A stretch of 64,000 bases of DNA from Octopus bimaculoides (GCF_001194135.2 NC_068998.1:16684834-16748833), one strand, 5' to 3'; shown: positions 5,202-48,556, numbered from the stretch's first letter. The notes: a model not told the origin generated them from the letters alone. Numbers and translations are program-made.

Positions 5202-5284
5202 TCAGGAACGCTGGTAAGGATGACTGGAGGCTGCTTTGATGTTAGTCTTGATAGTGCTTGGAGCTTTAGAAATATTGGCAGAAG
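5202..5284 (-). CDS. MED8: MED8 exon 7 (terminal)
   Basis: ag|(A)[29 protein letters not shown], 83 nt. Confidence 0.94.
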
Positions 5285-7451
5285 CTGGAAATATATAAAA
5301 AAAACAAGGGGTAGTTTTTAAGAACACAGATTATGACCATAAATATGAAAAAATCAATCATGTTATGCTTTGCTGAACCTTTTTAAGACTAACTTAACTG
5401 GCAACAGATTCCACCTTTATTTTGATGTTGACTTGTTTGCAATAGAAAATACAACTAGATGTTGCTACTTAGTCCCTGGTGAACCTGGAACAAGCAGGTC
5501 TATAATCAAAAGCTCTCCAATTGCAATTATCCTGCCTTTTCTAGACTACATCATTGAAGGTGTATTTTTAAGACAACATGGTTTAATTTGGTTACTTTCA
5601 CAATCACACGGGTTTGGTTTTGGTTTTGTTTCACTGCATAGCACCTTGGCAGTGTATCTTCTACTACAGCCCTGGTCAGGCAAAAACATGAGTGAATTTA
5701 GTAGAGAGAAACTGCAGGAAGCTTGTGGTGTGCATGTGCATATGATGCATGAAAGCTGACATTCCAAGCAAGTCACCACTTGAGCAAAATGGTCATAATA
5801 TTCACATTCTTTGTTGGCATTATGACCAGTGGTTCTGCATACTGAAAGATCATCATCATCATTTTAATGTCGGCTTTGCCCTGCTTGCATGGGTTGGTTG
5901 GAGTTTATGGAGGCAGATTTTCTACAGACAGATACCCTTCCTGTTGCCAGCGCTCACCTGTTTCCAAGCAAGGTAATATTTCCTCATGGCTTGACGTGTG
6001 TTTAGAAATGACTGATATTCATTTACACATTCACATGATGTCAAAACAAGAGAGCACGCATACACGACAAGCTTCTTTCAGTTTCCAGCCACCAAATCTC
6101 AAGGCTAAGGTTGGCCCAAGGTAGAAGACACATGCCTAAGGTGCCACACAGTGGGACTGAACCCAAAACTGTGTTGTTGGGAAGCAAACTTCTTAACCAC
6201 ACAGCCTGCGCCTATATAATAGTACATAACACAACATGTATTTAAGAGGTTAAAAGAATGAAAATGTGAGGTAACTTACCTGGTGGCTTCTGAGTCTGTG
6301 GCTGAGTATTAATGTTGTTATTCTGATGAGAATTCTCAGAACGTCGAGGTGTTGGTTGTTTGAGACCTTTCCCAACAGTGATGGCCTGAATTAGAGTATT
6401 GGTATCTGCCATTGAAGATGTCTGTGGCTGTGCCGATTTCTGATCTGAAGTCCAAAAAGTAAGTAAAATTCATTTCCATTAGATGACAGCAATATAAAGA
6501 CAAAATGGCCCAAGTAGGTAAAGTGTCAGAGGTACCTTATCAATATGACCCAAATAGATAAGATAGCTGGTAGTGCAATACTACTGACCTGTATCTTATC
6601 AGTTCAGATCTCAGCTGCTGATGAGTTTGTGGTGCTCCAGAAAAGTTACCAGGTTGTTGGTAAAACATATCAAATCTGGGAACATTATCATTACCTTTGA
6701 TAACTAATCTCCCTTCTTAATGTGCAAAGCCAGGAGAAAAGACAATTTTATTACGTTTGTTCTGCATTGATAATTATATTGATTGGAAAATAAAATTGAA
6801 TATATGTGTGTGTGTATGAAGAGATATGGCTTAGTGGTTAGGGAGTTGCACTCCTGATTGTGAGATTGTGGTTTTGATTCCCAGATCGGGCGTTGCATTA
6901 TGTTCTTGACCAAAGCACTTCATTTCACATTGCTTTGCAAGCATTTCGTCATCTGACATGTGGCACATGGTGCATTTGTACAAGTAAAGTCAATATGATA
7001 GAATGATAGAGGGATTGAGCTTATGTGAACACAAACATTTGATCCACTATAAGCAAATCATCTGTGTAGTTGTTCAGCAAGAAATTGCAGAAACCTCATG
7101 CATTGTCTAATGATGGGAGAGTCCATGATATATATATATCAGTTTCAGTCTATAAGGCACTGATTGGTTTAAGGCTACATAGTAAGTGGTGTGTAGCAGA
7201 ACTGAACCTGAAACCATGTGGTTTGTAAAGTGAGCTTCTTAACCACAAAGCCATTCCTGCACCTAAGTATCAATTAAATTTCATAAGTTTTGTTGCAGTT
7301 GTTAGTTTTACATAATTTTTCTTCAGCTCATATCCATACCCATATAATACCTCCCATACTTACTTGCTTCGCTTTCCCATTCTTCTCGAGCAGAATTGAT
7401 GATGTCAATGATGTTGCTGGTGATTTTGTTTAGAGAATTTAATTGTTTCTG

Positions 7452-13964: not shown

Positions 13965-16900
13965 CACACACACATACATACATATGGATGGGGAAATTAC
14001 ATAACTGTCTGTAAGACACATAATGGCTTCTATTAACATAGAAATGTATACTTAGAGAAACATTTTAGCCATAATATAAGAAACCATCAAAGAGGATAAA
14101 GAAAGAAATGAAAGATACAATGAGGACAGAGTACGGTACAAATATCTGAGAAGCATGCACAATATGAGAGAGTAATGTTAGTTCAGCAAGTCTGGATCAA
14201 GAAGAGGTTTTCTTTTTTTGTTTTTTTTTTTAACAACTTAAGTCAATGTTTCATAGTTGACCTGTTGCTGTCGAATGGGAGACAAGACACAAGCAGACAA
14301 TGACTAAAACAACATATAGGACATAAGTACAACTTACCTGGCTGTACAGCATGTAAGGCTGCATCAAAGAAATACAGTAAAGAAATAACATTCGTTTTAT
14401 TTACACAGTTTGGACAAGTAAGGGTTATATGGAGAAAAATAAATACATATACGGCAATAGGAATCAAAAGAGGGCTTTTGTTAAATAGTCAGGAATAATG
14501 AGACAATTTTCTACACATCATCAAATTATTCTTTTACTGGTTCCAGTCATTAGACCATATCATCCTACTCATTTAAGCCCTACACTCCCAATAGAGCGTA
14601 GACCATTGACAACAGGAAAAGCCCCCGGCCCATCAGGAATCACTGCTGAGATGCTTAAAACATCTGGTGGTGTGGGCTATGGCCTAGTTACCTGCATTGT
14701 AAACCATGTAGTTTATGATGGAGTCATACCCAATGACTGGCATAACAGCACTATAGTCAACTGCAACAAGGGTAAAGGTGATGCTTTAGATAGAAATAAC
14801 TACAGGGGTATCAAACTGCTGGATCAGGTGATGAAGGTCATGGAGAGGGTCATAGTCCATCTCATTAGGGAGAGAGTCTGCTTAGATGAGATGCAGTTCG
14901 TTTTTGTGCTGGGTAGAAGCACCACTGATGCTATATTCCTGGTTCGACAACTGCAGGAGAAATACCTAGCTAAAGATAAACCCCTATACTTGACTTTTGT
15001 GGACTTGGAGAAAGCCTTTGACAAGGTCCTCCAATGCCTTATCTGGTGGGCAATGTGGAAACTGGGGATTGATGAATGGTTAATAAGGGCTGTACAGGCT
15101 CTATACAGAGATGCCGTTAGTAAGGTTAGGATTGGCAATGAGTATAGTATAGAATTCTGGGTAGAAGTAGGGATCCACCAAGGATCAACTCTCAGTCTCC
15201 TTTTATTCATCATAGTCCTCCAGGCAATAACAGAAGAATTCAAGGTGGGTTGTTCCTGGGAGCTCCTCTATGCTGATGGCCTGGCCCTTATAGTAGAATC
15301 ACGATCAGAAGTGGAGAAGAAATTTCAGGTGTAGAAGCAAGGTTTAGAATCAAAAGGCCTTAGAGTCAATGTAGCAAAGACCAAAGTTCTAGTAAGTAGG
15401 AAGGCGAACTCATCACACACCCTCAGGTAGGTGGCCCTGCTCGATTTGTAGAAAAGGTGTAGGTAGAAACTCCATAAGATGTACCCAATGTAAGCTATGA
15501 ACACATAAGAGGTGGGACTGCACCTAGAAAGTTCCCCTACGAGGCACAAGTCCGGGCAAGGTTGTTTATGGAAGACCAGCAGTCGCCCATGCATACCAGC
15601 CTCCTCTCTCCATGCCACCAATGTTATCCAAGGGAAAGGCAAAGGCTGATACAGCTTGGCACCAGTGATGTTACAACTCATTTCTACAGCTGAGTGAACT
15701 GGAACAACATGAAATAAAGTGTTTTGCTTAAGAACACAATACACAGCACAGTCCTAGAATCGAATTCACTACCTCATGATTGTGAGACTGACGCTCTAAC
15801 CACAGCCACGCGCCTTCACTAAGGAGGTCTATAAATAATATCAAATTATGGTAAAGTAATTTTTTTTGGCTCACTCCATATACACATATGCATTCACAAA
15901 CACACACACACACACAGACAAAAACATGCACATAACTTGCATACATACATTCACACACACACATTAGGACACTTATCATCGCAGAAACGTATTGGATTGG
16001 AATTAGATGCTTTGTTATACACTCTGTATGTTGTATGAAATGCAATGATGTGAACTCTTTACCAATCGAGTGAAGTACAGTTCAATTGTTTATCTTAAAC
16101 GATTCTGAATACGCCTCATCATTCGATCTGGTTAGCCAGATCTGGATTATATCAGAGTACTCACAAAGTACCTACCCGAATTCCAAATCCCAATTCTTTA
16201 ATGTTACATGCACGGGCGCACACACACACACACACATGCATGCACTCAAGTGTGCACACATATATATATATACATACAAGTATATATATATACATACATA
16301 AATATATATATACATATGCACACATATATATAAGGCTAGCGGAGTTAGATGTTAAAATAATTGTCTAAGGGATAAAAATATCCATTATACTATCAGTATA
16401 TTACCTATATTTAAACATGGGAAAACATGTTATGCTCATAAATTATAGGCAAAGAAGGATAAACAGGAGTTTATCAGGAATCAAAATTTAAAGAAAACAG
16501 AAAATGGAGATAATATTGATGAACAACAATTGATTTTCATCAATTATTATTTATTGATTATTTACAAAAAGATTGCTAGATGGCTATTAGATGGGATGCA
16601 GTCTTTTTGTAAATAATTAATAAATAAAAATTGATGCAAATCAATTGTTGTTCATCAATATTATTTCCATTTTCTGTTTTCTTTAAATACACACACACAC
16701 ATATATATATACACACATACATATATACATGTACACATACACAATATAGGTAGTTAGGTAAAATTCGTCTGTCTTCCATGCTGGCATGGGTGGGACAATT
16801 TCTAATAGGAAATTCCTTACATGTCCATCTAACATGTTAAACTCTATGACTCCTATTAGCAAATGAAATGCATGTAATGGTGATTAATAATAGCAAAAAA

Positions 16901-18795
16901 TTTCCAATTTCCTGCTTTGTTTGTTTTGTTATATATATATTTTATTTTATTTATTTATGTGTTTCAGCCAAGTGGCTGCGGTCATGCTGGTGCACCACAT
17001 GGAGATATATATTTTAGTGTTAGTGGTAATAGAGAATCTAAAGGAACCAAATTTCATGCCATGATAAAGCACCAAAAAAGATGTGGACAAGCTGGAAACA
17101 AAAAAATGTTGAAATTAAGTTAGTTATTATCTGTTATGGTACACTAATTCATATTCCTTTGATTAGAAATCTTACCTGCTTCTCAAAACTACTGAATCAA
17201 GTTAAAACGATGTACAGCTAAAATATGTTGACTTATATGTCAAGGATTCCGTATCAGGCGCAATAATGTTTAAAACCACAAAAAAGATCGGAATATAATT
17301 GATGTTGTTGTGGTTTTGCCTCAGGACAGCCCTGCTGAAGTAAATCTATAATGAAAATGAACCAGCTATGATCATAACATCATCTTTTCAGACAATGTTT
17401 CTAGAACTACTGTCCGGAACTTCCATTTTAAGATAGTGATGTATGATCTGAAGTGAATTTGACTGCTATTGTTACCGAGTCATAACACAATGTAGAGGTT
17501 CCTTTGTTGATGTATTGAGAATTGATATTTTATTGCTAGGAATGTTTGTCATAAGATGACAGGAGACAATTTAAGTAAATGTATTTTATATGATCTAATT
17601 GTTGATATGCTGGAATGAAAAGTTAGATTAAACTTGATTTGTATCTTCACTGAAAACACAAAGCTGCCATCAGCTACTCAATAGTAAAAACTCTTACAGG
17701 CTTTGAGGAAATGTCTAGTCCATTTAGGTTTCTAATCATGACAATGCCAGTAGATTTCAAAGGCATAAAATTGAAGATGTATTAGTAATATATTTGAGGT
17801 TAGAGTTTGCAGCTCTTTCTGTGTCAAGCAAATTGCATTGAAGCCCTATTCATGAAGCCTGGGATCTATGTAGCTAGTACTAGTTAACTGTAGTAATTAT
17901 ATATTGGTTTCAGATTTTGGCACAAAGCCAGCAATATTGGGGGAGGGATGAAGCTGATTCCTTGGTGGAATTTGAACTCAGAATATAAAGATCGGTGAAC
18001 TACCATTAAGTATTTTGCCCAGTGTGCTAACGATTCTGCCAGCTTCCTGCCTTAACTGTAGTAATTATATATTAATACAAGCTACCAAATTTTCTTGTGA
18101 ATAAGTTGCCTCCCTAATTTAGAGTTAAATCTTGGAACAAAATTTTTTCCTTACATAGTTTTAGCTTTGCCCTATGTCTGAGTTGCACCCCAGTTTTTTG
18201 TTTTTTTAAATCAAATATAAAATAGTGTGACTTACACAAGAACAGATATGGTAATTATATTTCTTAAAGAAATTGATACTAAACACAAACAAAGAAAAAA
18301 AAAAAAAAGAAAACATTATTTTTCAAAAACAACCATGCTCTCGTCTTACCTGTGTTGTATCATGGCTGCTAGGGCCTAACCGACAGGTAAGTTCATTGAA
18401 CTTCTCTTCAACTTCAGGTTCTGGTTTGGTTCGAAGGTATACAGGAACAACTTCATGATTGAAAATCATTAATCGGCCTTCAGTTAGTTTCTACAAAAGA
18501 CAATACAGTAAAAGAAGTTAAAAACTCTTAAATTGCTGAGCAATTTCTATCCAACTGTGTAGTCAAGTTTACTCCTTTGTTACTCATATTCATGTATGCA
18601 CAGTTATGTAAGCATATAACTGTGCCTACATATAGTAAATCTATTATTACAGATGTGGCAGGTTGTCTAAAGATCACATCAATTCATCCCATGTGTTTAT
18701 TTCTAATTTTAAATGTCATTTGAAGTTATTGTGTAAATAAGTGTACACTAATTCATTTACAAATGTATAAATATACAAAATGACATATGTATTTG

Positions 18796-18828
<33 letters not shown>

Positions 18829-21800
18829 GTACTTCATGTATATATGCATTTCATTTAGATCTGTGGTTCTCAATCATCTTTTAGCTACTGACCCTTTTCA
18901 TTCTTATTTTTCTTAGATGGATCTTCATAGCCATTTGATGTTCAAAAAATCCCATTGTAAAATCAGGTCATGTGTGGGTATCGCTCTCACTATATATTAC
19001 TAAATAATGCACATAAAGGTTTATTTGTTAGTTCAGAAAAACGAGATTTCTTAAAATTAAATAATCCTATAATGCCAATTATATTCATTACCTCATTAGT
19101 AGGTAAGTAGGGGGTCATTATATTTAATATGCAAAAGCCATTGTAGAATTAAATAAACAGAGAGGAAAAAATATTAGCTGACATACAGTCAACATCATCA
19201 TCATCGTTTGACGTCTGTTTTCCATGCTGGCATGGGTTGGACGGTTCGACTGGGGTCTGGGAAGCCAGGAGGCTGCATCAGGCTCCAGTCTGATCTGGCA
19301 GTGTTTCTACAGATGGATGCCCTTGCTAACGCCAACCACTCTGAGAGTGTAGTGGGTGCTTTTTACGTGCCACTGGCACAGGGGCCAGAGGGGTCTAGCA
19401 ATGACCACGATCGGTTGGTGCTTTTTATGTGCCACCGACACGGAAGCCAGTCAAGGCGGCGCTGGCATTGGCCATGTGTGGATGGTCTTTGCAACATTGA
19501 CTCTAAGGCCCTTCGGTTCTAAACCTTGCTTCCACACTTGAAATTTCTTCTATAGTTCTGGTAGTGATTCTGCTATGAGGGCCAGGTCATCAGCATAGAG
19601 GAGCTCCCAGGGGCAACCTGTCTTGAATTCCTCTGTTATTGCCTCGAGGACTATGATGAATAAGTTCACAACAGAGTTTAAAACATTTCTTGTATGGCAT
19701 TTGTAAAATTTTGAAATAAATTTTCAGAACAGAGGGTTAAAAATAACATTAAAAGAAAGGAGCTATCAATCAAGACTATAGTTTCATATATATGATGAAC
19801 AGTTGCTTTCAAATATTTAGAAACATTAAAAAGTTACTTCAAGTTCTGGATCTTTATCTGGAGAAAGAGCAAGTGGAAGCAAGACATAATTCTTCAAAGG
19901 TGGGATTTTTTCACTTTTTAATAATCGTGTCAATGAATTCAGCTGTCCTGAGAGCAAGGCAAAATTATCAAGTGCATTTGGCCTGGAAAAAGAGAGAAGA
20001 AAAAGAAAAAGCAAAGTTGAAACCTGTTCAGGAATATTGGAGATGTAGGAAGACATGGAAACAAAGTAATGAAAAAAAACTGAACAACATGAAAGAGATG
20101 ACAAAAAGATCATAATAGGAGACTCATGGTACTGGAGAGTACGTGCCCACTAATGCCAACATAGCAAAATGGTCATTAAACTAATGATGGTGGTGATGAA
20201 GTTTGGGGTATATATAATTAGGTCTCTTGTCTAATATATTCCTATTAAGTCTCTCTTTGTTCTCCTAATCTATTCACTGTACCACATCACCTGTGAAATA
20301 AAGTCACTGTTTATATTGAATCCATCTTTCATCCCAACTTTGCTTCTCTCTCACCATCTCACTTTATGTCTCAACTCCTTTCATCCACAACAATTCCCAA
20401 GTAAAAAGGAATGGAAATGGATATGTTTGTATTTGGCACTCAATAACATCACCCCTTTCTGCTAACCATCTCTACCCCAAGTAACTCTTCATTGATATTT
20501 ACCAGTTATCATCATCCACATCCATTACTGTCACCTGCTCTCTCTCTTAGCACAACACAACTTCATTGCTATCCCATCATATTGTGCTATTTTTCTTCAA
20601 TCTCCTCTCTAAAACCAAAAGTCAAAGTGTTTATTTAACTTGCAACAATATAAAATCATTTTCTTATTTGACTAATACCAACTACATAAAGTACCAGACA
20701 CTATGAAAGGTGTGTAGCAGAGGCATGATTGTTCTTTACCTTTAGGTATCTGCATTTTGCCTCCTTACCTTTAGATACCCATTTTGGCTCATAACGTGAT
20801 GGTCAAGTTCATTTAGCTTTACGTGGGCTGTCCACCCCTTAATGTGATAGACTAACCAGGTGTCCCTACATCAGCTATTTAAGGGAAGCTTTTTCCCTGC
20901 TTATTCCTTAGGAAGGTGGGTTTGGATTGACATGAGAGCAGTTTATTCCACTTTGTAGCTTCAGCAAGAGCAAAACTGTAGCAGGAATTTCTTGATGCAA
21001 TGCTTAGCATTTTTTTCCAATGTTCATCTTCATTTTCGAGAAACACTTTGAAACTATGTAATGTATTTAACAGATTTTTCACGTTATGCTAGTTGCTGTA
21101 TTTCCATTTAGTGTTGGAATAAATGTTGCAGTCAATTTTATATTGTCTTTATATTTATTGATGTTCGTTATCCTGATTTTTATTTACCCAGAAGATATAT
21201 TACCAGGACTTAAATCACATTGCATCACTTAACATGACACTATGCAAAGTGTTTCACTGTAATTTGCCTGACATTATACCACTGAGTCTCTCCTGTACCA
21301 CTCATATTTTCTTCTTCTCCATCTTATTGGTCATCACTCTTCTATTCATATTCCCTGTCATGTTTCCCATGTAGTCTAGTGGGTAGGATTCCCGACTCTC
21401 ACCCAGGTAGCCTGAGTTTGATTCCCGGTGTGGGAACTGGTTAACTTTGTGTAACCTATGCCAACATGGAAAGCAGACACTAAATGATGATGATGTTTCC
21501 CTCAAGAAGAAAAGAGACAATATAGATTAAAGAAGACATTTTAGCCTTGCAGGGAGACATGGTAACTTCTCTAGTGTTGGTAACCTGATAAAATGTAGCC
21601 AGTACCCATTGTAAAGTGGCTGGCAATTAAACAGAGACAACATAGGACACAGGGGATTCTTTAGTTTTGTTGAGAACATGACAACTTCTGTTGTGCTTAT
21701 GTCATGATAATATGCTCTTTGTACACTTTGTTAAGTGGTTGATGTTAAAAAGGGTATCCTGTCATAGAAATCATGCCAAAATGAATTGAAAAGGCAAGAC

Positions 21801-24456
21801 GTGATCCTTTGACCTGTCCAAAACTGAAGTAACTCCAAATAAGAACTGAATTGGACAGCGATAACACATGAAACCTATGTCAGCATAAAAACATGTTTTG
21901 ATATTCGTCATTTGGTTGTTGATATAACAAATGTAGAAGTATTAAAGAAATCAATAGACCTACATGAACTCAGCATGCAGAAATAGATATAAAAATGATG
22001 AAAATAGAGTCTTCAAAGAGAATCTCTTCATTGTTGCTCAGCCAAATGAAAATAACTGAAAAGAAAGGACACATTAGATAGTGCAATTGTAGATATAAAT
22101 AAAATTATGGGATAATCACAACTGGAACACTTTTGATAAGAAGTCAGTTTGATCAGGGCTGACTTGTGGTTAAACAACAGCCATGAGCTCCATTTTCCTT
22201 TAAAAAGAGAAAACTGGAAAAATTAAATTACTCACCATGACATTGAAGCATATTCATGCTCTATTTTCATCAGAAAACTGTGAATACAATTTTTCAAATC
22301 AGAAATTCTTTGTGTGATTGTATCTAAAGCAGCTTCTAACTGTTTTTCTTCTCGCTATGAAAATCAAATGAAAAATATTTGTTAAAGCATATTTTATGAA
22401 GCCTTTTTCTTGTCAAAAGAAAGGATAAAAGATATTAAAGGATATGTAAATATCCAAATTTGCAAAATAATCTGTTTCCATTCACTATTTTAATATTTGT
22501 TTCCCACTTTCTTTATCATCATCATTGCTGAACCTTACGAAGGAGATAACAGAAGACCGAGATATGTGGCACATTGCTGTACTCGAGAAGACCCAGCCAC
22601 CACAACAGAATTGAGATCCTAAAGCCAAGGTACCACATAAAAAGCATTGATGTGGATGCTGGTATCATGTAAAAAGCACTGGTGATGGTGACATGTAAAA
22701 AGTACCCACTACTCTCAGTAAAGTGGTTGGCTTTAGGAAAGGCATCCAGCTGTAGACACCAAGCCAAAACAGAATATGGAGCCTGGTGCAGACCCTGGCT
22801 TTGCCTGTTACTGTCAACCCATCCAACTCATGCCAGTATGGAAAATGGACATTAAATATTGATAATAATGATGATCATCATCGTTTTAACATCTACTTTT
22901 CTATGCTTGCATGGGTTAGATAGAATTTTGTGAAATTTTCAATGGCCAGATGGCTTTCCTGTCACCAAGCAAAGAAATATTACTCCATGGTTGCGACATG
23001 TTCAGGTAAAATATTGGAAATGAATGGCACTCTTTTACTACAATTATGCAATATCAAGACAAACACACACACATATGTATTTATGGTGGGATTCTTTCAG
23101 ATCTCATCTACTAAATCCACTCATGAGGCCTGGGGTAATAGTAGAAGAAATTTGTCAAAAGTGTCATGCAGTGGGACTGAATCGCCTAAGGTTTGTCCAT
23201 AAATGGCATGTAGCTTCATTTTAAGGAATATCATCTGAAATTCTTTGTATTAAGTTTTCGTCAAGAGCAAGACTCATGAATTTTATGTGTACTGCGATAA
23301 AGTGAATGTACAATTGTTTACCCGTTTTGCTTTATATGATGAAGTGTTAGGGATAGAGAAATTATGTGAGAATATGACGGAAAGTGCTTTAGCATTTTAT
23401 TTAGCTTTACAAAGCAAGGGATCACTCGTAAATTTGATAACCGGAAGTGGCCGCTGACAAATGTAGCGAAATTTCAAGCAGAAATAAAGTTAGTTTACAA
23501 TTCTACAAGAGCAAAATACACATTTTAAACTAAAGTATCAAAACAAAATCCAGTAAGGTAAAATGAAAACAAACAAAATTAACCAAAGTCAATATTCAAT
23601 GTTGAAATAAATATCGAAAGTAAACTATTTCGAGTTTTTACAGGATAGAGCGAATATTTCTAATTTTGGCATAACTACTGAAAGTTATGACCTCCCAANN
23701 NNNNNNNNTTTATTGTTTACAATTACTTTTCATGAAAAGAAAACAAATACAAATAATTTAACAATATTAATAAATCCGAATTTCCACATGTACTATGCTA
23801 CATGATTTGCATGGACTATACCAGTTATGTTTTATTTACATCTATTTATATATAAATATAAATTGTACTCAGTAAAAATGATTGTTTTATCATGCAATTC
23901 AAAATGCACAAACGATATACTCCAATTCAAAAGCAGAGCTTTATTTTAATTTAAACTTTAGAAGATATCGCAGCTTCAACTTTAGTATTGTAAATTGCAG
24001 CGTGTTTATGTCACACATTTATACGCAGCCTTGTTAATAGCAAGTTTAGCTCCTGGTGGGTAATAAAGAGATCATTGTTAATAGCAAGTCACATCTAAGA
24101 TGCAGTGGTCGAAACACTATCTCTAAAGAGTTTAATAGCATTTTCCGTTTAATTTACCATGTATAATAGATCAACGGAACAGATCAACGGAAGTTTATTA
24201 AAATGAACTGAATAAATGGTTTTTCAAACGTTTTTTTTTACGACTTTTGAACATAACAGTCATAACTGCTTCAGAAACTTCTCATGGGATCCATATGTAA
24301 GCAAAATGATGAATCGGATAAAACCTATTACCGATGATGCTTAGATAATTCAACTGGAGTGAGAAAACTGAGAGAAATAATATATATATATTTATATATA
24401 AGATATACTATTAAAGAATCTGAGATAATAATAGTGTGAGCAATAATTACCTGCAT
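5202..24456 (-). CDS. MED8: Mediator of RNA polymerase II transcription subunit 8, complete spliced CDS (7 exons, 744 nt, 247 aa)
   Basis: complement(join 24451-24456, 22236-22354, 19838-19982, 18350-18490, 7364-7448, 6280-6444, 5202-5284). All introns are GT-AG with matching phases. Protein [119 protein letters not shown]...[21 protein letters not shown] matches the recognised MED8 motifs (MQREEKQLE, [12 protein letters not shown], TEGR..FxHEVVP.xLRTKP, IKTNIKxAS.HPYQR). Confidence 0.96.
6280..6444 (-). CDS. MED8: MED8 exon 6
   Basis: ag|(N)[34 protein letters not shown]...QKPP|gtaagt, 165 nt. Confidence 0.92.
7364..7448 (-). CDS. MED8: MED8 exon 5
   Basis: poly-T tract, ag|[28 protein letters not shown]|gtaagt, 85 nt. 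Confidence 0.93.
7555..7840. mobile_element. piggyBac-type MITE family B
   Basis: TTAACCCATTACCT ... AGGTAATGGGTTAA, a perfect 14-bp inverted match including TTAA. Confidence 0.75.
8427..8664. repeat. Minisatellite, 7 units of 33-37 bp
   Basis: Consensus about GACTCAGACCACAAAGAGTCAACAAATATAGCACT. Confidence 0.85.
12130..12440 (+). mobile_element. RTE LINE ORF C-terminus plus start of 3' UTR
   Basis: Translates ..[27 protein letters not shown], followed by TTGCGAAGACCTGTTGAG, which is also seen at 53780-53900. Confidence 0.7.
13756..13985. repeat. (TA)n/(CA)n microsatellite with N gap
   Basis: Direct reading; other microsatellites at about 11708-11770, 27689-27742, 29310-29490, 45645-45695, 48520-48573, 55950-56008. 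Confidence 0.95.
14611..15510 (+). mobile_element. RTE-clade LINE reverse transcriptase fragment (5'-truncated, inactive)
   Basis: ORF 14498-15334: [53 protein letters not shown] (catalytic YADD mutated). A stop follows, then continued RTE-like frame ([19 protein letters not shown]). Confidence 0.9.
15515..15819 (-). mobile_element. tRNA-headed SINE
   Basis: Minus strand begins GTGAAGGCGCGTGGCTGTGGTTAGAGCG..GAATTCGATTC (A and B boxes). Related decayed copies near 35700-35930, 39340-39510, 40240-40570. Confidence 0.75.
16487..16687. repeat. 201-bp fold-back (90-bp arms, 21-nt loop), TTAA|AG..CT|TTAA ends
   Basis: 16487-16576 and the reverse complement of 16598-16687 match at 85 of 90 positions. 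Confidence 0.9.
18350..18490 (-). CDS. MED8: MED8 exon 4
   Basis: ag|[47 protein letters not shown]|gtaaga, 141 nt. Confidence 0.95.
19195..19670 (-). mobile_element. Internally deleted RTE copy (3' tail fused to RT segment)
   Basis: 19490-19670 is the reverse complement of the RT segment seen at about 15200-15385 (intact YADD here), joined directly to a 3'-end segment at 19195-19480. Confidence 0.7.
19838..19982 (-). CDS. MED8: MED8 exon 3
   Basis: ag|(W)[48 protein letters not shown]|gtaact, 145 nt. Confidence 0.95.
21365..21436 (+). pseudogene. tRNA-Glu(CTC)-derived pseudogene
   Basis: 72 nt TCCCATGTAGTCTAGTGGGTAGGATTCCCGACTCTCACCCAGGTAGCCTGAGTTTGATTCCCGGTGTGGGAA, colinear with eukaryotic tRNA-Glu; anticodon CTC at 21398-21400. 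T-loop is TTTGA rather than TTCGA, the anticodon stem is mismatched and there is no clear T4 terminator. Confidence 0.75.
22236..22354 (-). CDS. MED8: MED8 exon 2
   Basis: ag|[39 protein letters not shown](W)|gtgag, 119 nt. Confidence 0.95.
23440..23449 (+). promoter_or_regulatory. ETS/GABP-type motif ACCGGAAGTG in MED8 intron 1
   Basis: Exact consensus in a CpG-retaining zone about 1 kb from the promoter. Function is inferred. Confidence 0.35.
24451..24456 (-). CDS. MED8: MED8 coding exon 1 (ATGCAG, MQ)
   Basis: Minus strand reads ATG CAG|gtaatt and supplies the MQ that precedes REEKQLE, phase 0. Confidence 0.85.
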
Positions 24457-24709
24457 GCTGATCTGTCGGGTAAATAATACCGTTTATAAGTTTCATTACT
24501 TCCGGTGTGCTGTAAGAGAGGAGAGTTCAGCGGATGTTGTTACTGTCATCACATGATTGACAAAATGGATGTCGTCTCAGACGATTCGATGGGTTGAGAA
24601 TATTAAACAGGATTATTTATAAACTACCTGGGCACAGTTTTGTGTCTCCAGTGAAATTCAGTAAGATAGAAAAAAAAACTAAAAAAAGAAAAAAACAAAC
24701 TTGCTTACA
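24457..24709. promoter_or_regulatory. Bidirectional promoter and 5' leaders shared by MED8 and SZT2
   Basis: 253 bp between two divergent ATGs. Contains an ETS-type ACTTCCGG (24498-24505), TCACATGA (24549-24556) and retained CpGs. Confidence 0.75.
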
Positions 24710-24751
24710 ATGGATGAAACAGATGAAGCTAGAAGCTTTGACGGAGACCAA
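24710..24751 (+). CDS. SZT2: SZT2 probable coding exon 1 ([14 protein letters not shown])
   Basis: ACAATGG start context, ends CAA|gtaaca in phase 0, matching exon 2. Short acidic N-terminus; homology alone is weak. Confidence 0.6.
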
Positions 24752-24995
24752 GTAACAATATTTTCCTTCTCTCTCCCTTATTGTCTAGCAAATGTTTATT
24801 TCGTAACATTCCTCTGCAGAAGGTTGTACCATGCCGATACAAGTCCTTTTCTGGTGTTTATTTGTCTGTCATAAATAAGACAGCTATCTGTTCTGTTTTG
24901 TCCTGCAGACGAAATTAAATTAGAATGTTGTGATCACGTTAATGAAATGCTATGTTTTCATTCAACATCATATACACATACACACGCACAGGTGA

Positions 24996-25027
<32 letters not shown>

Positions 25028-30700: not shown

Positions 30701-33700
30701 AAGCAAAATTTGGAATAAGCTAACAGAATCAAGGGTCATTGTCATTTTTATTAAGTGTCTACTTTTCCATGCTTGCATGTGTCTGGCTGAATTTGTCAAG
30801 ACAGTTTTTTCTATGGCTGGAAGCCCTTCCTGTCTTCAACCTTCACCTGTTTCCAAGCAAGGTAATATTTATCTATGGTCAGTTATGTTTTCTACTGAAG
30901 ACTGGAAAGAACAACATAGCTTTATGACTGTGATGCTCATTTACAACTATGCTGTCTAGACAAGGGTACATACACAAACACACACACACACACACACACA
31001 CACATGTCTGATGGGCTTCTTTCAGTTTCCCTCTACCAAATCCACCCGTAAGGTTTTGGTCAGCTTGAGGCTCTTGTAAAAGACACTCACCCCCAGGTGC
31101 TGTGCTGTGGAATGAACCCAAGACCAGATGGCTGGGAAGCAAGCTTCTTAACCACACCTATGCCTATTTAAGGTAAATTGAGAATAACAATGGAAGCAAT
31201 AAAACTCATTGGTTGTTATTTGTATTTTTCAGTCTGCTCCTGAAGCAAAGGAAATTTACCTTTTGATGAAGAAAGAATACAGGATATCACGAAACATCCG
31301 AGCAACATGGTATTTCAACCATTTAAATACCACAATGACATTTGTACCTCCTGTAAGCCTTGTAAGTATGTGGCTATTCACATTCATTTATGAAACCTTG
31401 TAGATGTTTAAATTTTGAAGTGCAGAAGTTGTCAATAAGTACCTCTGTTTATCATATCATTTTTTTAAAAATAAAAACAGAATAACAATACAATTTCAAA
31501 TTAATTAATTTTTTTACAATATTTTTGTGGGCAAGATGACATGCTCAATCATTAATTAACCTATCAGAAAAGTTGAAAAGATAATAGTTTGAATGGAACA
31601 GTTGACAGACAAGACAGTTGAAAAGTAAAAGTGTCTCATTGCTTGGGAAGGTTTATGACTGTGATAATACTTAGAGATGTTGTATGTAATCTCTACAGTC
31701 AGTAGTAATTAGAGTAGTATCTATTTAACAATGACACATCCAGAACACTTAGTCCTTTCATGATTTGTCCTTTTTTATTTTGTTTTAAATATAAGTGTAC
31801 TGTGAATCTTGAAAATTTTGGAGAGGAAAATGTTATTGTTGTTATATGCAACAGAAGTAGTATCAGATTAACTCTTTTGAAATCAACCTACCTGAAGCAG
31901 CCCTGGATTCTATGGCATAAACTTACTGTTCTAAAGAAGTTTAAATTATAATCTTCCATCAAAATTTGTTCTCGACCCCAGCTTAATAATGAGAAAGTTA
32001 TTTTAGTAAATTCTTCATTATACTAATATTGCCTCTATTGCTTGACAGGAGCTTTTTACATACCAGGTATGCAACACCAGCATCGGCCACATTGCCTTCA
32101 TGAGACTCAAACAAAAAATAAATATGTAAATGTTTGAATTTTCCAATCTATTCTAGTATTTTAAAAAGTTGGTTTTCATAATCATAATGGAACTTTTTCA
32201 TGTAATTTAAAAAAAAAAAATGAATGCTTCACATTTATGTTTGTCATTTTTAAAAATGTGTAACATTTTTTCTTTTACTTCAAGTCTGATTTATCATCAG
32301 AAGAACTGATAGTGTTGTCTGTGATCCCAGAGAAAAGCTATGTCACCTTCCAGCCAGGCAAAGAACATTCTTTCAAGCTTACCACACGCACCAAAGTGAT
32401 TTTCATGTCCACACAGTATAGAATTGCATTCGCCCTGGATCTAAGCCCGTCTGTGTCCTCTTTGGTAAGCTTTTTGTTTTTATTTTTCTAATTGTGATGT
32501 TGCAATTATAAAGTATTAAATATAATGTTGTATTAAGTATAGCATAGCATTAAATATAAATTGGTGTTGTAGGAGCATTCTTCATAATAATGGTTTCAAA
32601 TTTTGGGGGAAGAGTTAAATTAATTACATCAACCCTAGTGTTCAACTGGTACTTATTTTATCAACATTGAGAGAATGAAAGGCAAAGTTGACCTCTGTGG
32701 CATTTGAACTCAGAACGTAAAAACAGACAAAATTCCACTAAGCATTTTACCTGGTATACTAATGACTCTGCCAGCTCGCTGTCTGAACATTCTTTATTAT
32801 ATTGCTGAAATTATAGACGCCCCAAATTGGGGTGGTGTTGAGTTATATACTTAAATGATTATTTTAGAAAATCTACTTACTATGCAAGGGATACTGAGTA
32901 TTAATTTCATTGGAAAAGGAAACCAGCATTGCCAGACTTGGCTATCAGAAAAATATTCTTTTCTACTCTAATCACAAGGCCCAAAATTTTGGGTGAGGCG
33001 GGGGGGGTCTGTCAATTAGATCGACCCAGTACACAACTGGTACTTAATTTATTGACCCCCCCCCCAAAGGATGAAAGGCAAAGTCGACCATGACGGAATT
33101 TGAACTCAGAATGTAAAGTCAGACAAAATACTGCTAAGCATTTCGCTTGGTGTGCTAACATATCTGCCAGCTCGCTGCCTTATATTCAGAAAAATATTAA
33201 GATCAAAATTTAGAAATGCTGTTGAAATGGCGATAAGATACCTGAAGGTTTGTATTACCATAGAGTAGAAGAAACTCAGAAAAGTCCCTGAGGTAGTTTT
33301 AATTTTCTGTTAGCTATTTCGTTTTAGGTGTGACTTGCAAAATGCACTGATATTTAGAAAAAGTGAGTATTATTTAATGCGCTGCACCAGTGTAAGTATA
33401 TTCTTGGGAGGAAAGTGTAACACATTCACCCGTCTCTGTTTCAGAACAATTGTAATATTTGTTTTTTATATTTTATCTTTTACTTGTTTTATTGTTTTAG
33501 TCATGGGACTATGGTCATGCTGGGGCACTACCTTGAAGGGTTTAGTTGAGCAAATCGATCCCAGTACTTAGTTTTAAAATCTGGTACCTAGTCTATCAGG
33601 CTCTTTTATCAACCCTTGGAGTTAAGGGGATGTAAACAAACCAACACCAATTGTCAAGTGGTGGAGGGGATAAATGTGCCTTCAGCCAGGTTCCTCACAG

Positions 33701-36700
33701 GCAAGACACATAGGTATAAAATCTTCTGGGAAGGTAACAGTGAAGGGGTAGGTGGTGTGGGCATACTTCTTGCAGAGAAATGGGTGGATAAGGTCATAGA
33801 GGTAGTCAGAGTGTGTGATAGAGTACTTAAGCTCAGGCTAGTCTTGCAGAGTAGTATAACAACAATTATCTCTGCCTATGCCCCACAAGCGGGCCCACCA
33901 AATGAACAAAAGTTGAGTGGCAATGATCTCATCTTTGTGGCTGGGGATATCAGTGGGCATGTTGAAGTGATATGTGTTGTAGTTTTTTTTTTTTAAAGCA
34001 CCAGTCCTGATTCCCGATACTTTTTGATAAGACCTTGTATAAGCCCCTCAAACAGAGTTAATAGACAAACAGTTCTATGTGGCCTTTGTGTGAGCTATCA
34101 CAAGTATTGATGGCTGTGATATTGTCATAGAAGGACATTTGAAAGGCCACATCAGAAACACCAAGGTGTGTATTGAAGCTATGGCAGTAATACCTGAAAA
34201 GGAATCAGTTATGAAGATCATTGTCATCATCATCATATAACATCTGTTTTTCATGCTGGCATGGGTTGGATGGTTTCACTGAAGCTGGTAAAGCAGGGGC
34301 TGCACCAGTTGCCATTGCCTGTTCTAGCATGGTTTCTATGGCTGGATGCCCTTCTTAGTACAAACCAATCCACAGAGTGTACTGGGTGCCATTTACATGG
34401 CACCACCACCAGTGCTTTTAACATGACACTAGTACCAATGCATTTTAAGTGGCACCAGCGGCAGAGGAGGATATTTAAAGTATATCTTATTGAAAGATGG
34501 TATTGTGCCATAAATATTTTCCTTAGAAGCTCCTCAAAATATTTGTCTGAATTGAACAAATTAATGATATTTTTCTCATTTATCTATTTTAGGATTTATG
34601 TTCAGGTCGAGTACTGTGGGATGATGTTTACACTTCTTTGAAGAACTGTCTTACTGGTTTAGTACAGCCTGTAAGTAGATTTCAATAATTATTTCTTAAA
34701 GACAACTTTATATGTAAAACACATATGCACACTATATCTCTCTCTTTCTCTCTCCCTCTCTCTTGCTCTGAATTGTTTTCACTGAACTTGCTTCAAGAAA
34801 CACTGGATTATTAGTACAAGAAGTTAATTTATAATTATTTTTGCCAAAGATCTTAATTGTTTGGGTTAAAACTTGATCTTTTTTCTTCTTGCAGTTTTGT
34901 TCACCTGGCTCAGATCTAGCTCTGACTCCATCTCTTTATGTAACAGTTGTTGCTTACACACCATTAATTGCATGTCGCAATAATTTCGTAAGTATTCATA
35001 TATTTATAAAAAACATTCTTTTGGCATTGTATTTTTAACATCCACTTCTTCATGTTTGCATGGGTTGGAAGGAGTTTATGAGGCAAATTTTCAATCAGAA
35101 TATTAATGTTAACTCTCATGTTATATTTCTTTTTAATGTAATTCAATATTGTTGTGTCTCTCTGTGTTTTACTATTCATATTGAATTTTAGCTGTTTTTG
35201 TAATATTTATAGGTCTTATGTCAAGGAGTATTGGTTACAAGAAAAAATTTAAAAACCATTCTTGGTGAATTACATCGAATGCTCAAGGAGTTTGAGAATG
35301 CTGTTTCAAAACATTTTGCATCATTAGTAACTCTTCAAATGAATTCTGTGAGTGTAACATTTTTAATACTTTTTCATGTTCATCTTTGCTTAACCCTTTA
35401 ACATTTAAATAGGCCATATCGAACCAAAATATTCTACTGGTTTTATGTTTAAATTGACCAGATTCAGCCTCTCACACCTACCCTACAATCTCATTCTAAA
35501 AATAAATAATTACATCATTGAAATCTAGGAAGCATGAGATAATGCATGATTAATTCAAAACAGTGTGAATAAATAAGGATTACATTTGACAGAGTGATCT
35601 GAATGTTAAAGGGTTAATGTAATGAACTTATTTGGGTGGAAGAGATATATTGTTAGATCTATACAAGTATTACAAATTGTTTTCCGTCTGTCATGAACCC
35701 TAGGATTCATGAGGCTGGAGCTTGGCATATAAATTACTGAGATTACATCACCCTTCCTGAATGGGATGTCAATCCATTGTAGGGTTAACTCTCCAACTAT
35801 CTACAGCTGGGTTGATTGGAGCAACCTGAAGGGAAGTAATTTGCTTTAGAACACAACACACTGGCTAGTCCAGGAATTGAAACCATGATCATAAGATCGT
35901 GAATACAACACCCTAACCACTAGGCCTGGTGCAGCCTCCTGGACCCCAGCCGAACCGTCCAACCCATGCCAGCATGGAAAATGGACGTTAAACGATGATG
36001 ATGATGATTATTGACTACTTTTCTTTTTCTTTTAATGTATAGCATGAGCTTAGTGAAGTTACCTCTTTGAATGACATACCGTCTGTTGACACAAGAAGCC
36101 GCAGATCAAAATTGGATGAGCAGAAAGTTGAAGAACTTATATCCAAACCTGAACACGGTTTTGTTAATGTTCTCAGGTTTGGTATTTTGGCTCTACAGCT
36201 GTTACCAGAAAATGCATCAGCAGGTACTGTGAAGGAGTTTACTATACATTTGCATTTGTTTTTATTTTATTAAGTTTTTGACAGAACTGAATTAACTGAA
36301 ATAAAGCAAAATTATGTAATTTACTGCTAGATCACCATTCTTTGCTTATATACATTGTAATTTTGAAGCTATCAAATCCCCCCCCCCCCCAATGCTGTCG
36401 TTATTGTTATCATCATCATTGTTTAATGTCCTCATTTCCATGCTTGCATAGGTCAGGCTGAGTTTATAGAAATAGGTTTTCTTTGCTGACCCTCACCTGT
36501 TTGCATGCAAGGTAATAATTCCCCATGGCTGAACATGTTTACGCAGAATATTGGAAATGAATGACATTCGTTTACAACCGTCACATGATGCCAAAAAAAA
36601 AAAAAGAGACACAAATAAGTGGTTGATATTAGGAAGGGCATCCAGCTATTGGAGCTTGCTGCAGTCCTTTAATTCATCAAATCCTGTCAACCCATACCAA

Positions 36701-48524: not shown

Positions 48525-48556
<32 letters not shown>

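What the first reader, a model, noticed from the sequence alone, without database searches (positions are those of the whole stretch)
24451..24751. MED8 and SZT2 head-to-head on a 253-bp shared promoter, an arrangement also found in human
The sequence shows the two ATGs diverging 253 bp apart. Human MED8 and SZT2 are likewise divergent neighbours on 1p34.2 (established). If this is a mollusc, the pairing would predate the protostome-deuterostome split and would have survived the extensive genome reshuffling reported for coleoids, while the introns around it filled with transposons. That suggests (inference) an ancient co-regulation module linking Mediator to lysosomal amino-acid sensing (KICSTOR-GATOR1-mTORC1).
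Basis: partly seen in the sequence, partly recalled or inferred. Interest (0 to 1): 0.72.

Follow-up and report, generated by a model that had tools for sequence, protein, structure and literature searches.

The report
Ancient MED8–SZT2 shared divergent promoter
In this octopus sequence the genes MED8 and SZT2 start 253 bases apart and point away from each other, as they do in sharks, mammals and a brachiopod, so this is an ancient neighbour pair kept in some animal lineages and lost in many others, which is a known kind of genome feature.

Summary
MED8 starts at 24456 on the minus strand (ATGCAG|GT). SZT2 starts at 24710 on the plus strand with a 42-nt first exon ending at 24751. Exactly 253 bp lie between the two start codons. 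Both genes were rebuilt from the window with canonical splice sites and identified by Pfam and PDB searches.

The same head-to-head pair, with start codons 158-250 bp apart, is annotated in Octopus vulgaris, O. sinensis, Argonauta hians, the brachiopod Lingula and a shark. It is described for mammals in the literature. It was absent within 10 kb in abalone, scallop, a nemertean, an annelid, a horseshoe crab, amphioxus and a crinoid.

An origin in the bilaterian ancestor followed by repeated loss is therefore well supported; chance or convergence is not. The interval behaves as a compact bidirectional promoter. It is the only unannotated, non-repeat block in the window that aligns in order between Octopus and Argonauta, and it holds an ETS-type site, an E-box and a TATA-like element.

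A selected module linking Mediator to mTORC1 sensing is hard to reconcile with a pair that breaks often, and in scallop, abalone and amphioxus MED8 faces a different gene instead (NFYC, PHAX). This is a new, deeper example of a known class.

The parts
24457..24709 (.). The 253-bp spacer between the MED8 and SZT2 start codons. It is the putative shared bidirectional promoter and also holds both 5'UTRs.
   Evidence: Sequence read. Aligned to O. vulgaris, O. sinensis and Argonauta. Blastn joins it and both first exons into the only in-order Octopus-Argonauta block in the window that is not an annotated exon or a repeat. It shares exact, non-repetitive blocks of 17, 14, 14, 10 and 9 nt with Argonauta, whereas the flanking introns share only low-complexity runs or short matches of 10 nt or less.
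24451..24456 (-). MED8 coding exon 1. It encodes only Met-Gln (ATGCAG) and is followed by a GTAATT donor.
   Evidence: The same two-codon first exon (ATGCAG|GT, or ATGCAA|GT in Lingula) is seen in Argonauta, Lingula and shark.
22236..22354 (-). MED8 exon 2 ([11 protein letters not shown]...SMSW)
   Evidence: Canonical AG/GT boundaries.
19838..19982 (-). MED8 exon 3
18350..18490 (-). MED8 exon 4
14338..14358 (-). MED8 21-nt microexon (PYMLYSQ). It is present in the O. vulgaris model. It has no counterpart in human MED8 or in the Argonauta isoform.
   Evidence: The block is conserved with Argonauta DNA.
9713..9766 (-). MED8 54-nt exon ([18 protein letters not shown]). It appears specific to cephalopods.
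7364..7448 (-). MED8 exon 7
6280..6444 (-). MED8 exon 8
5202..5284 (-). MED8 last coding exon (...HPYQRS, then stop)
24710..24751 (+). SZT2 coding exon 1 ([14 protein letters not shown]), followed by a GTAACA donor; it ends in phase 0.
   Evidence: Identical in O. vulgaris and O. sinensis, at the end of the annotated 3826/3842-aa gene. Argonauta has MEETEEARDSDGDQ|GTAACA, the same length and the same donor.
31233..31352 (+). SZT2 exon 2 ([21 protein letters not shown]...). This is the first exon that aligns to human SZT2. An alternative in-frame donor lies 9 nt further on.
32285..32464 (+). SZT2 exon 3
34593..34670 (+). SZT2 exon 4
34895..34987 (+). SZT2 exon 5
35213..35347 (+). SZT2 exon 6
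36043..36223 (+). SZT2 exon 7
37907..38127 (+). SZT2 exon 8
39745..39890 (+). SZT2 exon 9
41514..41668 (+). SZT2 exon 10
47662..49360 (+). Region holding at least two further SZT2 exons ([15 protein letters not shown]..., and ...[12 protein letters not shown]...). Boundaries were not refined, and the gene runs on past the window end.
   Evidence: Open frames. They match human SZT2 residues ~625-696 and ~777-823 (chain 9o5d_E residues 644-715 and 796-842, less a 19-residue offset seen).
24498..24505 (+). ETS-type site ACTTCCGG, which reads CCGGAAGT on the MED8 strand. It lies 42-49 nt upstream of the MED8 ATG.
   Evidence: This 8-mer occurs only twice in 64 kb, against 0.34 expected. CGGAAGT is conserved in Argonauta. 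ACTTCCGG sits 11-18 nt from the Lingula MED8 ATG, and two CCGGAA sites lie 27-38 nt from the shark ATG.
24549..24556 (-). E-box / M-box-like TCATGTGA, inside a 14-nt block that is identical in all four cephalopod sequences.
   Evidence: The motif is not enriched in the window. It was not seen in the Lingula or shark spacers as printed.
24583..24599 (-). The longest exact block shared by Octopus and Argonauta, TCTCAACCCATCGAATC (17 nt). Its binding factor is unknown.
   Evidence: Its TCAACC core is one of only three 6-mers shared by the octopus, Lingula and shark spacers; the support is weak.
24610..24623 (.). TATA-like element GGATTATTTATAAA. It reads TATAAA on the plus strand and TATAAATA on the minus strand. 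The TAAATAATCC part is conserved in Argonauta.
   Evidence: A role as a TATA box is inference only.
24496..24549 (-). Upstream open reading frame in the MED8 leader (MTVTTSAELSSLTAHRK, then stop). The equivalent ATG in Argonauta is in frame with MED8 and is annotated as an N-terminal extension.
   Evidence: It shows that the MED8 transcript starts at least 93 nt upstream of its ATG, which leaves at most 160 bp to the SZT2 ATG.

Best explanation
The interval is the compact bidirectional promoter, plus both short 5'UTRs, of the octopus orthologues of MED8 (Mediator head subunit, minus strand) and SZT2 (KICSTOR scaffold, plus strand).

RNA polymerase II most likely initiates in both directions from a spacer of at most about 160 bp. 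This spacer carries an ETS-type site, an E-box and a TATA-like element. Each transcript has a tiny first coding exon (2 and 14 codons) followed by a large, repeat-filled first intron (2.1 and 6.5 kb).

The arrangement is orthologous to that of vertebrates and of the brachiopod Lingula. It therefore dates back at least to the last common ancestor of protostomes and deuterostomes.

Its survival is best explained by physical entanglement. The two core promoters overlap in a very small target, so a breakpoint there is both rare and likely to damage an essential gene. A functional partnership between Mediator and mTORC1 nutrient sensing is not needed to explain it. Where the pair was broken, both genes carried on, and in several of those lineages MED8 faces a new head-to-head partner.

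What is shown: gene identities, coordinates, orientation, spacing, and presence or absence across taxa. What is inferred: transcription start positions, motif function, and the reason for retention.
For: Gene models and identity:
- MED8.
- SZT2.

Same pair annotated elsewhere:
- O. vulgaris and O. sinensis, start codons 250 bp apart, with a 3826/3842-aa divergent neighbour. SZT2 exon 1 is identical at the gene end.
- Argonauta, 160 bp apart, 3857 aa. SZT2 exons confirmed.
- Lingula, 158 bp apart, 3932 aa. SZT2 exons confirmed by tblastn.
- Shark Stegostoma, 201 bp apart, 3814 aa. SZT2 exons confirmed.
- Mammals: head-to-head configuration and a possible shared promoter are reported in the literature.

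Shared fine structure. The MED8 first exon is ATGCAR|GT. The SZT2 first coding exon is short (14, 14, 5 and 9 codons in octopus, Argonauta, Lingula and shark), largely acidic, and ends in phase 0.

Wider block. Lingula and Argonauta share the three-gene order SZT2<->MED8-><-CARM1.

Promoter constraint. Between Octopus and Argonauta, only the exons and this spacer align in order. The spacer has exact complex blocks of up to 17 nt.

ETS motif. It is rare in the window. Its core accounts for two of the three 6-mers shared by the three phyla (3 shared against 0.62 expected, P about 0.04).

General background. 5'-5' pairs dominate conserved ancestral microsyntenic pairs (Irimia et al. 2012, PMC3514665). 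About 275 bilaterian microsyntenies persist in a coleoid (Schmidbaur et al. 2022, PMC9023564).

Chance estimate (my arithmetic). The probability that one named gene is the divergent 5' neighbour of another is about 1/(2N), roughly 3e-5 for 15,000-20,000 genes. Two further independent origins would be about 1e-9.
Against: - No RNA-seq, CAGE or chromatin data were available. Neither transcription start site is placed, and bidirectional activity is untested.
- The first SZT2 exon is too short and too divergent to align with human. Its status rests on cephalopod annotation and on conservation.
- The pair is missing within 10 kb in seven sampled lineages, including slowly evolving genomes such as amphioxus and scallop. 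Ancestry therefore requires about six independent losses.
- Sampling was one species per lineage with 10-kb flanks, and no cnidarian or other outgroup was examined.
- The motif evidence across phyla is weak. The E-box is seen only in the cephalopod sequences and is not enriched.
- A global-alignment control did not separate the spacer from the intron flanks (0.64 against 0.52-0.60 of bases identical).
Confidence: 0.8

Rival explanations
1. The pair is kept by selection for co-regulation. On this view it is a functional module that ties the dosage of a Mediator head subunit to lysosomal amino-acid sensing through KICSTOR, GATOR1 and mTORC1.
For: - The pair is retained, with a spacer under 260 bp, in three phyla over more than 500 million years.
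- Conserved ancestral 5'-5' pairs tend to be co-expressed in general.
- A review states that mouse Med8 and Szt2 have similar expression patterns.
- An M-box-like TCATGTGA is perfectly conserved in the cephalopod spacer. This is the kind of site bound by MITF/TFE factors, which control lysosomal genes (from my own knowledge).
Against: - The linkage was broken in at least six independent lineages, and the genes persist apart: MED8 in all six lineages looked up from its side, SZT2 in the crinoid.
- Where it was broken, MED8 in several lineages faces an unrelated head-to-head partner: NFYC in scallop and abalone, PHAX in amphioxus.
- No physical interaction was found in co-immunoprecipitation, according to the review.
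- The E-box is not the canonical CLEAR sequence, was not seen in the Lingula or shark spacers, and is not enriched in the window.
- Co-expression from a shared housekeeping promoter does not show a functional link.
Confidence: 0.1
2. Chance or convergence. MED8 and SZT2 became divergent neighbours independently in cephalopods, brachiopods and vertebrates.
For: The distribution is patchy. The pair is absent from the gastropod, bivalve, nemertean, annelid, chelicerate, cephalochordate and crinoid sampled.
Against: - Expected probability is about 3e-5 per lineage for this exact pairing and orientation (my arithmetic).
- The fine structure is the same in all three phyla: spacer of 158-253 bp, a two-codon MED8 exon 1, and a short SZT2 exon 1 ending in phase 0.
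- Lingula and Argonauta also share CARM1 downstream of MED8. Abalone and Lineus keep MED8-CARM1 although SZT2 is gone, so the break lies exactly on the 5' side of MED8.
- Scallop and abalone share the same replacement neighbour, NFYC. This means one loss event for those two classes, not two.
Confidence: 0.03
3. Gene-model artefact. The 42-nt open frame at 24710 is not the real SZT2 start. On this view SZT2 is transcribed from elsewhere in the 6.5 kb upstream of exon 2, and the spacer is the MED8 promoter only.
For: - Exon 1 does not align to human SZT2.
- There is a 540-N assembly gap at 25201-25740 inside the first SZT2 intron.
- No transcript data were available.
Against: - Exon 2 has no in-frame ATG before the conserved EIYLLMKK, so an upstream coding exon is required.
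- The candidate exon ends in phase 0 at a GT donor and joins exon 2 in frame.
- Its length, its reading frame and its GTAACA donor are all conserved in Argonauta. Three of the nine base differences are synonymous.
- Gene models for three cephalopod genomes start there.
- No other in-order conserved block exists between 24779 and 31227.
- Lingula and shark have the same short first exon next to MED8.
Confidence: 0.05

Closest known systems
Mammalian Szt2/Med8 head-to-head pair (Frankel et al. 2009, as summarised in the review PMC12732463)
   Same: The same two orthologous genes, in the same divergent orientation, with a very short spacer and a presumed shared promoter. My shark locus shows start codons 201 bp apart.
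   Different: The literature I could read describes conservation 'in mammals' only. Here the arrangement is shown in octopods and in a brachiopod. Its absence in seven other lineages is also documented. The octopus spacer is AT-rich (36% G+C), whereas the shark spacer has 69% G+C and a CpG observed/expected ratio near 1 (0.96).
Conserved ancestral microsyntenic pairs (CAMPs) in 5'-5' orientation (Irimia et al. 2012, PMC3514665)
   Same: Two unrelated genes are kept adjacent across metazoan phyla, in divergent orientation, with a spacer under 1 kb and conserved intergenic sequence. These are the predictions listed for the co-regulated class.
   Different: I could not check whether MED8-SZT2 is in their list, because the supplement is not held. 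Retention here is patchy: three of the ten phylum-level lineages for which a locus was examined.
ETS/GABP-type bidirectional promoters of vertebrate housekeeping genes
   Same: A short spacer with an ETS core (CCGGAAGT) close to one start. ETS-like cores are present in all four lineages that keep the pair.
   Different: The octopus spacer has no G+C enrichment (36% G+C; CpG observed/expected 0.89, against 69% and 0.96 in shark) and carries a TATA-like element. Binding of a GABP-like factor is untested. That ETS sites are enriched in bidirectional promoters is from my own knowledge, not from a tool result.
Metazoan microsyntenies retained in coleoid cephalopods (Schmidbaur et al. 2022, PMC9023564)
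   Same: A linkage of bilaterian age that survives the coleoid genome reorganisation. That paper counts 275 such blocks in Euprymna.
   Different: Neither MED8, SZT2 nor PF10232 appears in the held parts of their supplementary tables. One of those files was truncated when stored.

Membership tests
Bidirectional (head-to-head) gene pair with shared promoter | Two genes on opposite strands, transcribed away from each other | tested here: met
   MED8 lies on the minus strand from 24456 downwards. SZT2 lies on the plus strand from 24710 upwards.
Bidirectional (head-to-head) gene pair with shared promoter | Less than 1 kb between the two transcription start sites | tested here: inconclusive
   The start codons are 253 bp apart, so the start sites cannot be further apart than that unless there are upstream non-coding exons. 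The conserved MED8 leader suggests at most 160 bp. The start sites themselves were not measured.
Bidirectional (head-to-head) gene pair with shared promoter | The fragment drives transcription in both directions, and the two genes are co-expressed | not testable with these tools
   No expression, CAGE or reporter data were available. The only evidence is a literature statement of similar expression in mouse.
Conserved ancestral microsyntenic pair (bilaterian age) | Orthologous adjacency in both protostomes and deuterostomes | tested here: met
   Protostomes: Octopus (three species including the window), Argonauta and Lingula. Deuterostomes: shark here, mammals from the literature.
Conserved ancestral microsyntenic pair (bilaterian age) | Orientation and close spacing conserved | tested here: met
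   The pair is divergent in every case. Start-codon distances are 253, 250, 250, 160, 158 and 201 bp.
Conserved ancestral microsyntenic pair (bilaterian age) | Widespread retention across lineages | tested here: not met
   The pair is absent within 10 kb in Haliotis, Mizuhopecten, Lineus, Owenia, Limulus, Branchiostoma belcheri and Anneissia (tblastn checks).
Conserved ancestral microsyntenic pair (bilaterian age) | Present in non-bilaterian outgroups, which would make it pre-bilaterian | not tested
   No cnidarian, placozoan or sponge MED8 was among the listed hits.
CLEAR-network (TFEB/MITF-TFE) lysosomal promoter | Palindromic GTCACGTGAC-type CLEAR element(s) near the start site, conserved across species | tested here: not met
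   Only an M-box-like TCATGTGA is present. It is conserved among cephalopods, not enriched in the window, and not seen in the Lingula or shark spacers.

The most novel reading that the evidence does not exclude
The MED8-SZT2 spacer is part of an ancestral, selected regulatory neighbourhood rather than a passively retained pair. In lophotrochozoans this would be the three-gene block SZT2<->MED8-><-CARM1. CARM1 is a coactivator methyltransferase. On this reading, shared elements (the ETS site, the E-box/M-box and the 17-nt TCAACC block) couple the dosage of the transcription machinery to nutrient sensing. The lineages that lost the pair would have compensated by re-pairing MED8 with other transcription-related genes, namely NFYC and PHAX.
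Probability: 0.08. Interest if true: 0.6.

Novelty: new member of a known kind. Interest (0 to 1): 0.35.

Why it matters
The result gives one cleanly documented gene pair of bilaterian age with base-level anatomy in octopus. It comes with a presence/absence map across ten lineages and with identified replacement partners where the pair broke.

That makes it a convenient test case for an open question: are ancient head-to-head pairs kept by selection for co-expression, or simply because overlapping promoters are hard to split? The natural 'broken' lineages (gastropod plus bivalve, amphioxus, annelid) serve as controls.

It also supplies a small, conserved cephalopod promoter fragment of about 250 bp. 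This could be useful as a compact ubiquitous driver for the transgenic tools now being developed in cephalopods.

It does not reveal a new mechanism.

Tried and rejected
1. Homologue search with the SZT2 N-terminus. It returned only four short fragments and no full-length cephalopod SZT2, so I could not read an annotated octopus N-terminus directly. I used the end of the gene range in the annotated loci instead.
2. Pfam search of SZT2 pieces. No Pfam family matched any SZT2 piece. Identity rests on PDB chains.
3. Argopecten MED8 (P0008) was not on record for locus look-up. Mizuhopecten was used instead.
4. Papers. Frankel et al. 2009 is not held. Sun et al. 2019 does not mention Med8. The Irimia 2012 supplement is not held. 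The held Schmidbaur 2022 supplements do not list Med8 or SZT2.
5. Global-alignment identity as a test of promoter constraint. The spacer scored 0.64, but the AT-rich intron flanks scored 0.52-0.60, so this test does not discriminate. I replaced it with exact-block comparison and window-wide blastn.
6. K-mer sharing across phyla. Only the ETS core and GGTTGA are shared by octopus, Lingula and shark (P about 0.04). Pairwise sharing of 7- and 8-mers is at the chance level. I therefore make no claim of cross-phylum sequence conservation beyond an ETS-like site.
7. TCATGTGA as a CLEAR or M-box signature. It occurs 4 times against 4.5 expected in the window. I keep it only as a cephalopod-conserved block.
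8. CARM1 in the window. No exons were found in 1-5200.
9. The bacterial promoter and terminator scanner was not used, because it does not apply to a eukaryote.

Full report
**What is in the sequence**

The window is eukaryotic. It has about 35% G+C, seven N-gaps and introns full of repeats.

On the minus strand, 24456..24451 reads ATGCAG followed by GTAATT. The next coding block starts at 22354 after a TTTCATAG acceptor and reads REEKQLEA. Together these give [10 protein letters not shown], the same first ten residues as human MED8.

Nine exons with canonical AG/GT boundaries splice into an 819-nt reading frame: 24456-24451, 22354-22236, 19982-19838, 18490-18350, 14358-14338, 9766-9713, 7448-7364, 6444-6280 and 5284-5202. 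The 272-aa product is 270/272 identical to the annotated Octopus vulgaris MED8. An earlier 247-aa version, without the two small exons, covers Pfam Med8 end to end (E=4.8e-78) and matches human MED8 chains from Mediator structures (E=1.3e-65). ATGCARGT occurs only once on that strand between 22354 and 32000.

On the plus strand an ATG at 24710 opens a 42-nt frame, [14 protein letters not shown], which ends at a GTAACA donor after 24751. It joins in phase 0 to an exon starting at 31233 ([21 protein letters not shown]...). Ten exons with canonical splice sites give an open 450-aa frame. This frame aligns in order with human SZT2 residues 10-420 from KICSTOR structures (E=8e-80). More SZT2 exons follow around 47.7 and 49.0 kb.

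The bases between the two start codons are 24457-24709, which is 253 bp.

**Is the SZT2 start real?**

The 14 residues of exon 1 do not align with human, so I looked for independent support.

- Exon 2 has no in-frame ATG ahead of the conserved EIYLLMKK, so an upstream coding exon is needed.
- In the public assemblies of O. vulgaris and O. sinensis the MED8 gene is flanked by a divergent gene with a 3826/3842-aa product. Its range ends exactly at an identical [14 protein letters not shown], 250 bp from the MED8 start.
- In Argonauta hians the neighbour encodes 3857 aa. SZT2 exons 2, 3 and 8 are found upstream of MED8, together with part of exon 10 at the locus edge.
- The Argonauta first exon reads MEETEEARDSDGDQ|GTAACA. 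It has the same length and the same donor, and three of the nine base differences are synonymous.
- A blastn comparison of the whole window with the Argonauta locus aligns, in order, only the exons of the two genes and one further block, 24521-24779. This block is the spacer plus both first exons. Everything else that matches is dispersed repeat.

Inside the spacer, Octopus and Argonauta share exact, non-repetitive blocks of 17, 14, 14, 10 and 9 nt. One kilobase of each flanking intron shares only (TA)n runs or matches of 10 nt or less. A cruder global-identity control did not discriminate, and I do not rely on it.

**Anatomy of the spacer**

Reading from the MED8 side, the spacer contains:

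- An ETS-type site, CCGGAAGT on the MED8 strand (24498-24505). Its core CGGAAGT is conserved in Argonauta. The 8-mer occurs only twice in 64 kb, against 0.34 expected.
- A small upstream reading frame (24549-24496). Its ATG is annotated in Argonauta as an in-frame N-terminal extension of MED8. This places the MED8 transcription start at least 93 nt upstream of its ATG and leaves at most 160 bp to the SZT2 ATG.
- An E-box or M-box-like TCATGTGA (24549-24556), inside a perfectly conserved 14-mer.
- The 17-mer TCTCAACCCATCGAATC (24583-24599).
- A TATA-like element, GGATTATTTATAAA (24610-24623), which reads as TATA on either strand.
- A T/A-rich tract leading up to the SZT2 ATG.

The functions of these elements are inference. 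TCATGTGA is not enriched in the window and was not seen in the Lingula or shark spacers.

**How old is the pair?**

I used all twelve locus look-ups on MED8 orthologues and on one SZT2 fragment from other lineages. Each had 10-kb flanks. I checked each locus by tblastn with SZT2 and MED8 queries.

Pair present:

| Species | Group | Start codons apart | Neighbour product |
|---|---|---|---|
| Octopus (window) | cephalopod | 253 bp | not complete in window |
| O. vulgaris | cephalopod | 250 bp | 3826 aa |
| O. sinensis | cephalopod | 250 bp | 3842 aa |
| Argonauta hians | cephalopod | 160 bp | 3857 aa |
| Lingula anatina | brachiopod | 158 bp | 3932 aa, eight SZT2 exon blocks found |
| Stegostoma tigrinum | shark | 201 bp | 3814 aa, SZT2 exons found |

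Pair absent within 10 kb:

| Species | Group | What lies 5' of MED8 |
|---|---|---|
| Haliotis asinina | gastropod | NFYC (see below) |
| Mizuhopecten yessoensis | bivalve | NFYC (see below) |
| Lineus longissimus | nemertean | no gene called |
| Owenia fusiformis | annelid | a kinesin, in tandem orientation |
| Limulus polyphemus | chelicerate | no SZT2 |
| Branchiostoma belcheri | amphioxus | PHAX, head-to-head, 544 bp away |
| Anneissia japonica | crinoid, looked up from the SZT2 side | no MED8 upstream |

A 2025 review, citing Frankel et al. [quoted passage not shown]

**Ancestry or convergence?**

The chance that one named gene is the divergent 5' neighbour of another is about 1/(2N), roughly 3e-5 for 15,000-20,000 genes (my arithmetic). 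Independent origin in three phyla is therefore not credible. Three further observations point to inheritance.

- The fine structure is the same wherever the pair exists. The MED8 exon 1 has two codons. The SZT2 exon 1 is short (14, 14, 5 and 9 codons), largely acidic and ends in phase 0. The spacer is 158-253 bp.
- Lingula and Argonauta also share CARM1, convergent with MED8 on its 3' side. Abalone and Lineus keep MED8-CARM1 although SZT2 is gone. The breaks therefore fell on the 5' side of MED8.
- In scallop and abalone the replacement neighbour is the same gene. Its exons match between the two loci. It is NFYC: Pfam CBFD_NFYB_HMF at 7e-17 and PDB NF-YC at 1.2e-47. That is one loss before gastropods and bivalves split, not two.

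The most economical history is a pair present in the protostome-deuterostome ancestor, followed by about six losses among the lineages sampled. I could not sample cnidarians or other outgroups, so an older origin remains open.

**Why was it kept?**

The data do not support this.

- The linkage is lost often, including in slowly evolving genomes.
- The genes persist apart: MED8 in all six lineages looked up from its side, SZT2 in the crinoid.
- MED8 has acquired unrelated head-to-head partners (NFYC, PHAX).
- The review reports no MED8-SZT2 interaction by co-immunoprecipitation.

The general literature shows that 5'-5' orientation and very short spacers are typical of conserved ancestral pairs (Irimia et al. 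2012). It also shows that a few hundred bilaterian microsyntenies persist in coleoids despite the reorganisation of their genomes (Schmidbaur et al. 2022).

I therefore favour passive-plus-purifying retention. Two overlapping core promoters sit in a target of about 250 bp, so breaks there are rare and usually harmful. This step is inference.

The only cross-phylum sequence feature is an ETS-like core near the MED8 start in octopus, Argonauta, Lingula and shark. The support is marginal: three shared 6-mers against 0.62 expected, P about 0.04. It fits the ETS/GABP type of bidirectional promoter known from vertebrates (my own knowledge).

**Verdict**

The evolutionary claim, that the pair predates the protostome-deuterostome split and survived in coleoids, is well supported, with the important qualification of frequent loss. 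The functional claim is unsupported.

The mammalian pair was already known. The octopod and brachiopod instances, the loss map and the replacement partners appear to be new in the literature I could search. They are a new example of a well-known class, not a new kind of system.

Noticed in passing
L003:16457-26457, L004:16419-26419, L005:12140-21516, L010:12606-22606: MED8 and the arginine methyltransferase CARM1 lie tail-to-tail (convergent) in Argonauta, abalone, the nemertean Lineus and Lingula. These represent three lophotrochozoan phyla (molluscs, nemerteans, brachiopods). Lingula and Argonauta thus share the three-gene order SZT2<->MED8-><-CARM1. No CARM1 exons are present in window 1-5200. 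In human, CARM1 is on another chromosome (from memory).
   Followed up: partly
L009:544-8388 and L004:1-4714: In scallop and abalone the divergent 5' neighbour of MED8 is the same gene, NFYC (histone-fold subunit of NF-Y), instead of SZT2. The locus table lists it without any Pfam hit. Human NFYC is also at 1p34.2, a few Mb from MED8 (from memory), which hints at local reshuffling within one ancestral neighbourhood.
   Followed up: partly
L007:5163-9457: In amphioxus (B. belcheri) MED8 is head-to-head with PHAX, with starts 544 bp apart. COMMD9 lies beyond PHAX. MED8 seems to end up in divergent pairs repeatedly.
   Followed up: no
window 14338-14358 and 9713-9766 (minus strand): MED8 has two small exons with no counterpart in human MED8: a 21-nt microexon (PYMLYSQ) and a 54-nt exon ([18 protein letters not shown]). 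The Argonauta isoform has only the second, so these are probably alternatively spliced and specific to cephalopods.
   Followed up: partly
window 24496-24549 (minus strand): A 17-codon upstream reading frame lies in the MED8 leader. Its first part is conserved at the DNA level in Argonauta, where it runs in frame into MED8 and is annotated as an N-terminal extension. Both differences within the conserved part change the amino acid, so the constraint looks to be on the DNA or RNA rather than on a peptide.
   Followed up: partly
window 21365-21436 (+): A tRNA-like sequence (Rfam tRNA, 38.6 bits) lies inside MED8 intron 2. It may be a tRNA gene or the head of a tRNA-derived SINE.
   Followed up: no
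window 55595-55758 and 56222-56728 (+): Two copies (96% identical over 164 nt) of an element with a DDE_3 transposase-like reading frame (Pfam E=5e-6, just under the curated cut-off). They lie in an SZT2 intron next to an N-gap and are probably a Tc1/mariner-type transposon.
   Followed up: partly
window 19181-19363, 22709-22873, 34214-34392, 37728-37888, 63288-63460 and others: Several families of short interspersed repeats (about 110-170 nt) are scattered through the introns of both genes. They also hit many places in the Argonauta locus, so these repeat families are shared across octopods.
   Followed up: no
L008:10001-15199 and 20424-25199: In the crinoid Anneissia, SZT2 appears to be split by the annotation into a 387-aa N-terminal model and a 3603-aa model 5 kb downstream.
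   Followed up: no
L006:9800-10000, L010:9843-10000, window 24583-24599: A TCAACC core occurs in the spacers of all three phyla: TCAACCTA in shark and, on the other strand, in Lingula; CTCAACCCA in octopus. In octopus and shark it is followed, going towards MED8, by a CAYGTS element and then the ETS core. This could be a shared promoter grammar or it could be chance. The statistics are weak.
   Followed up: partly
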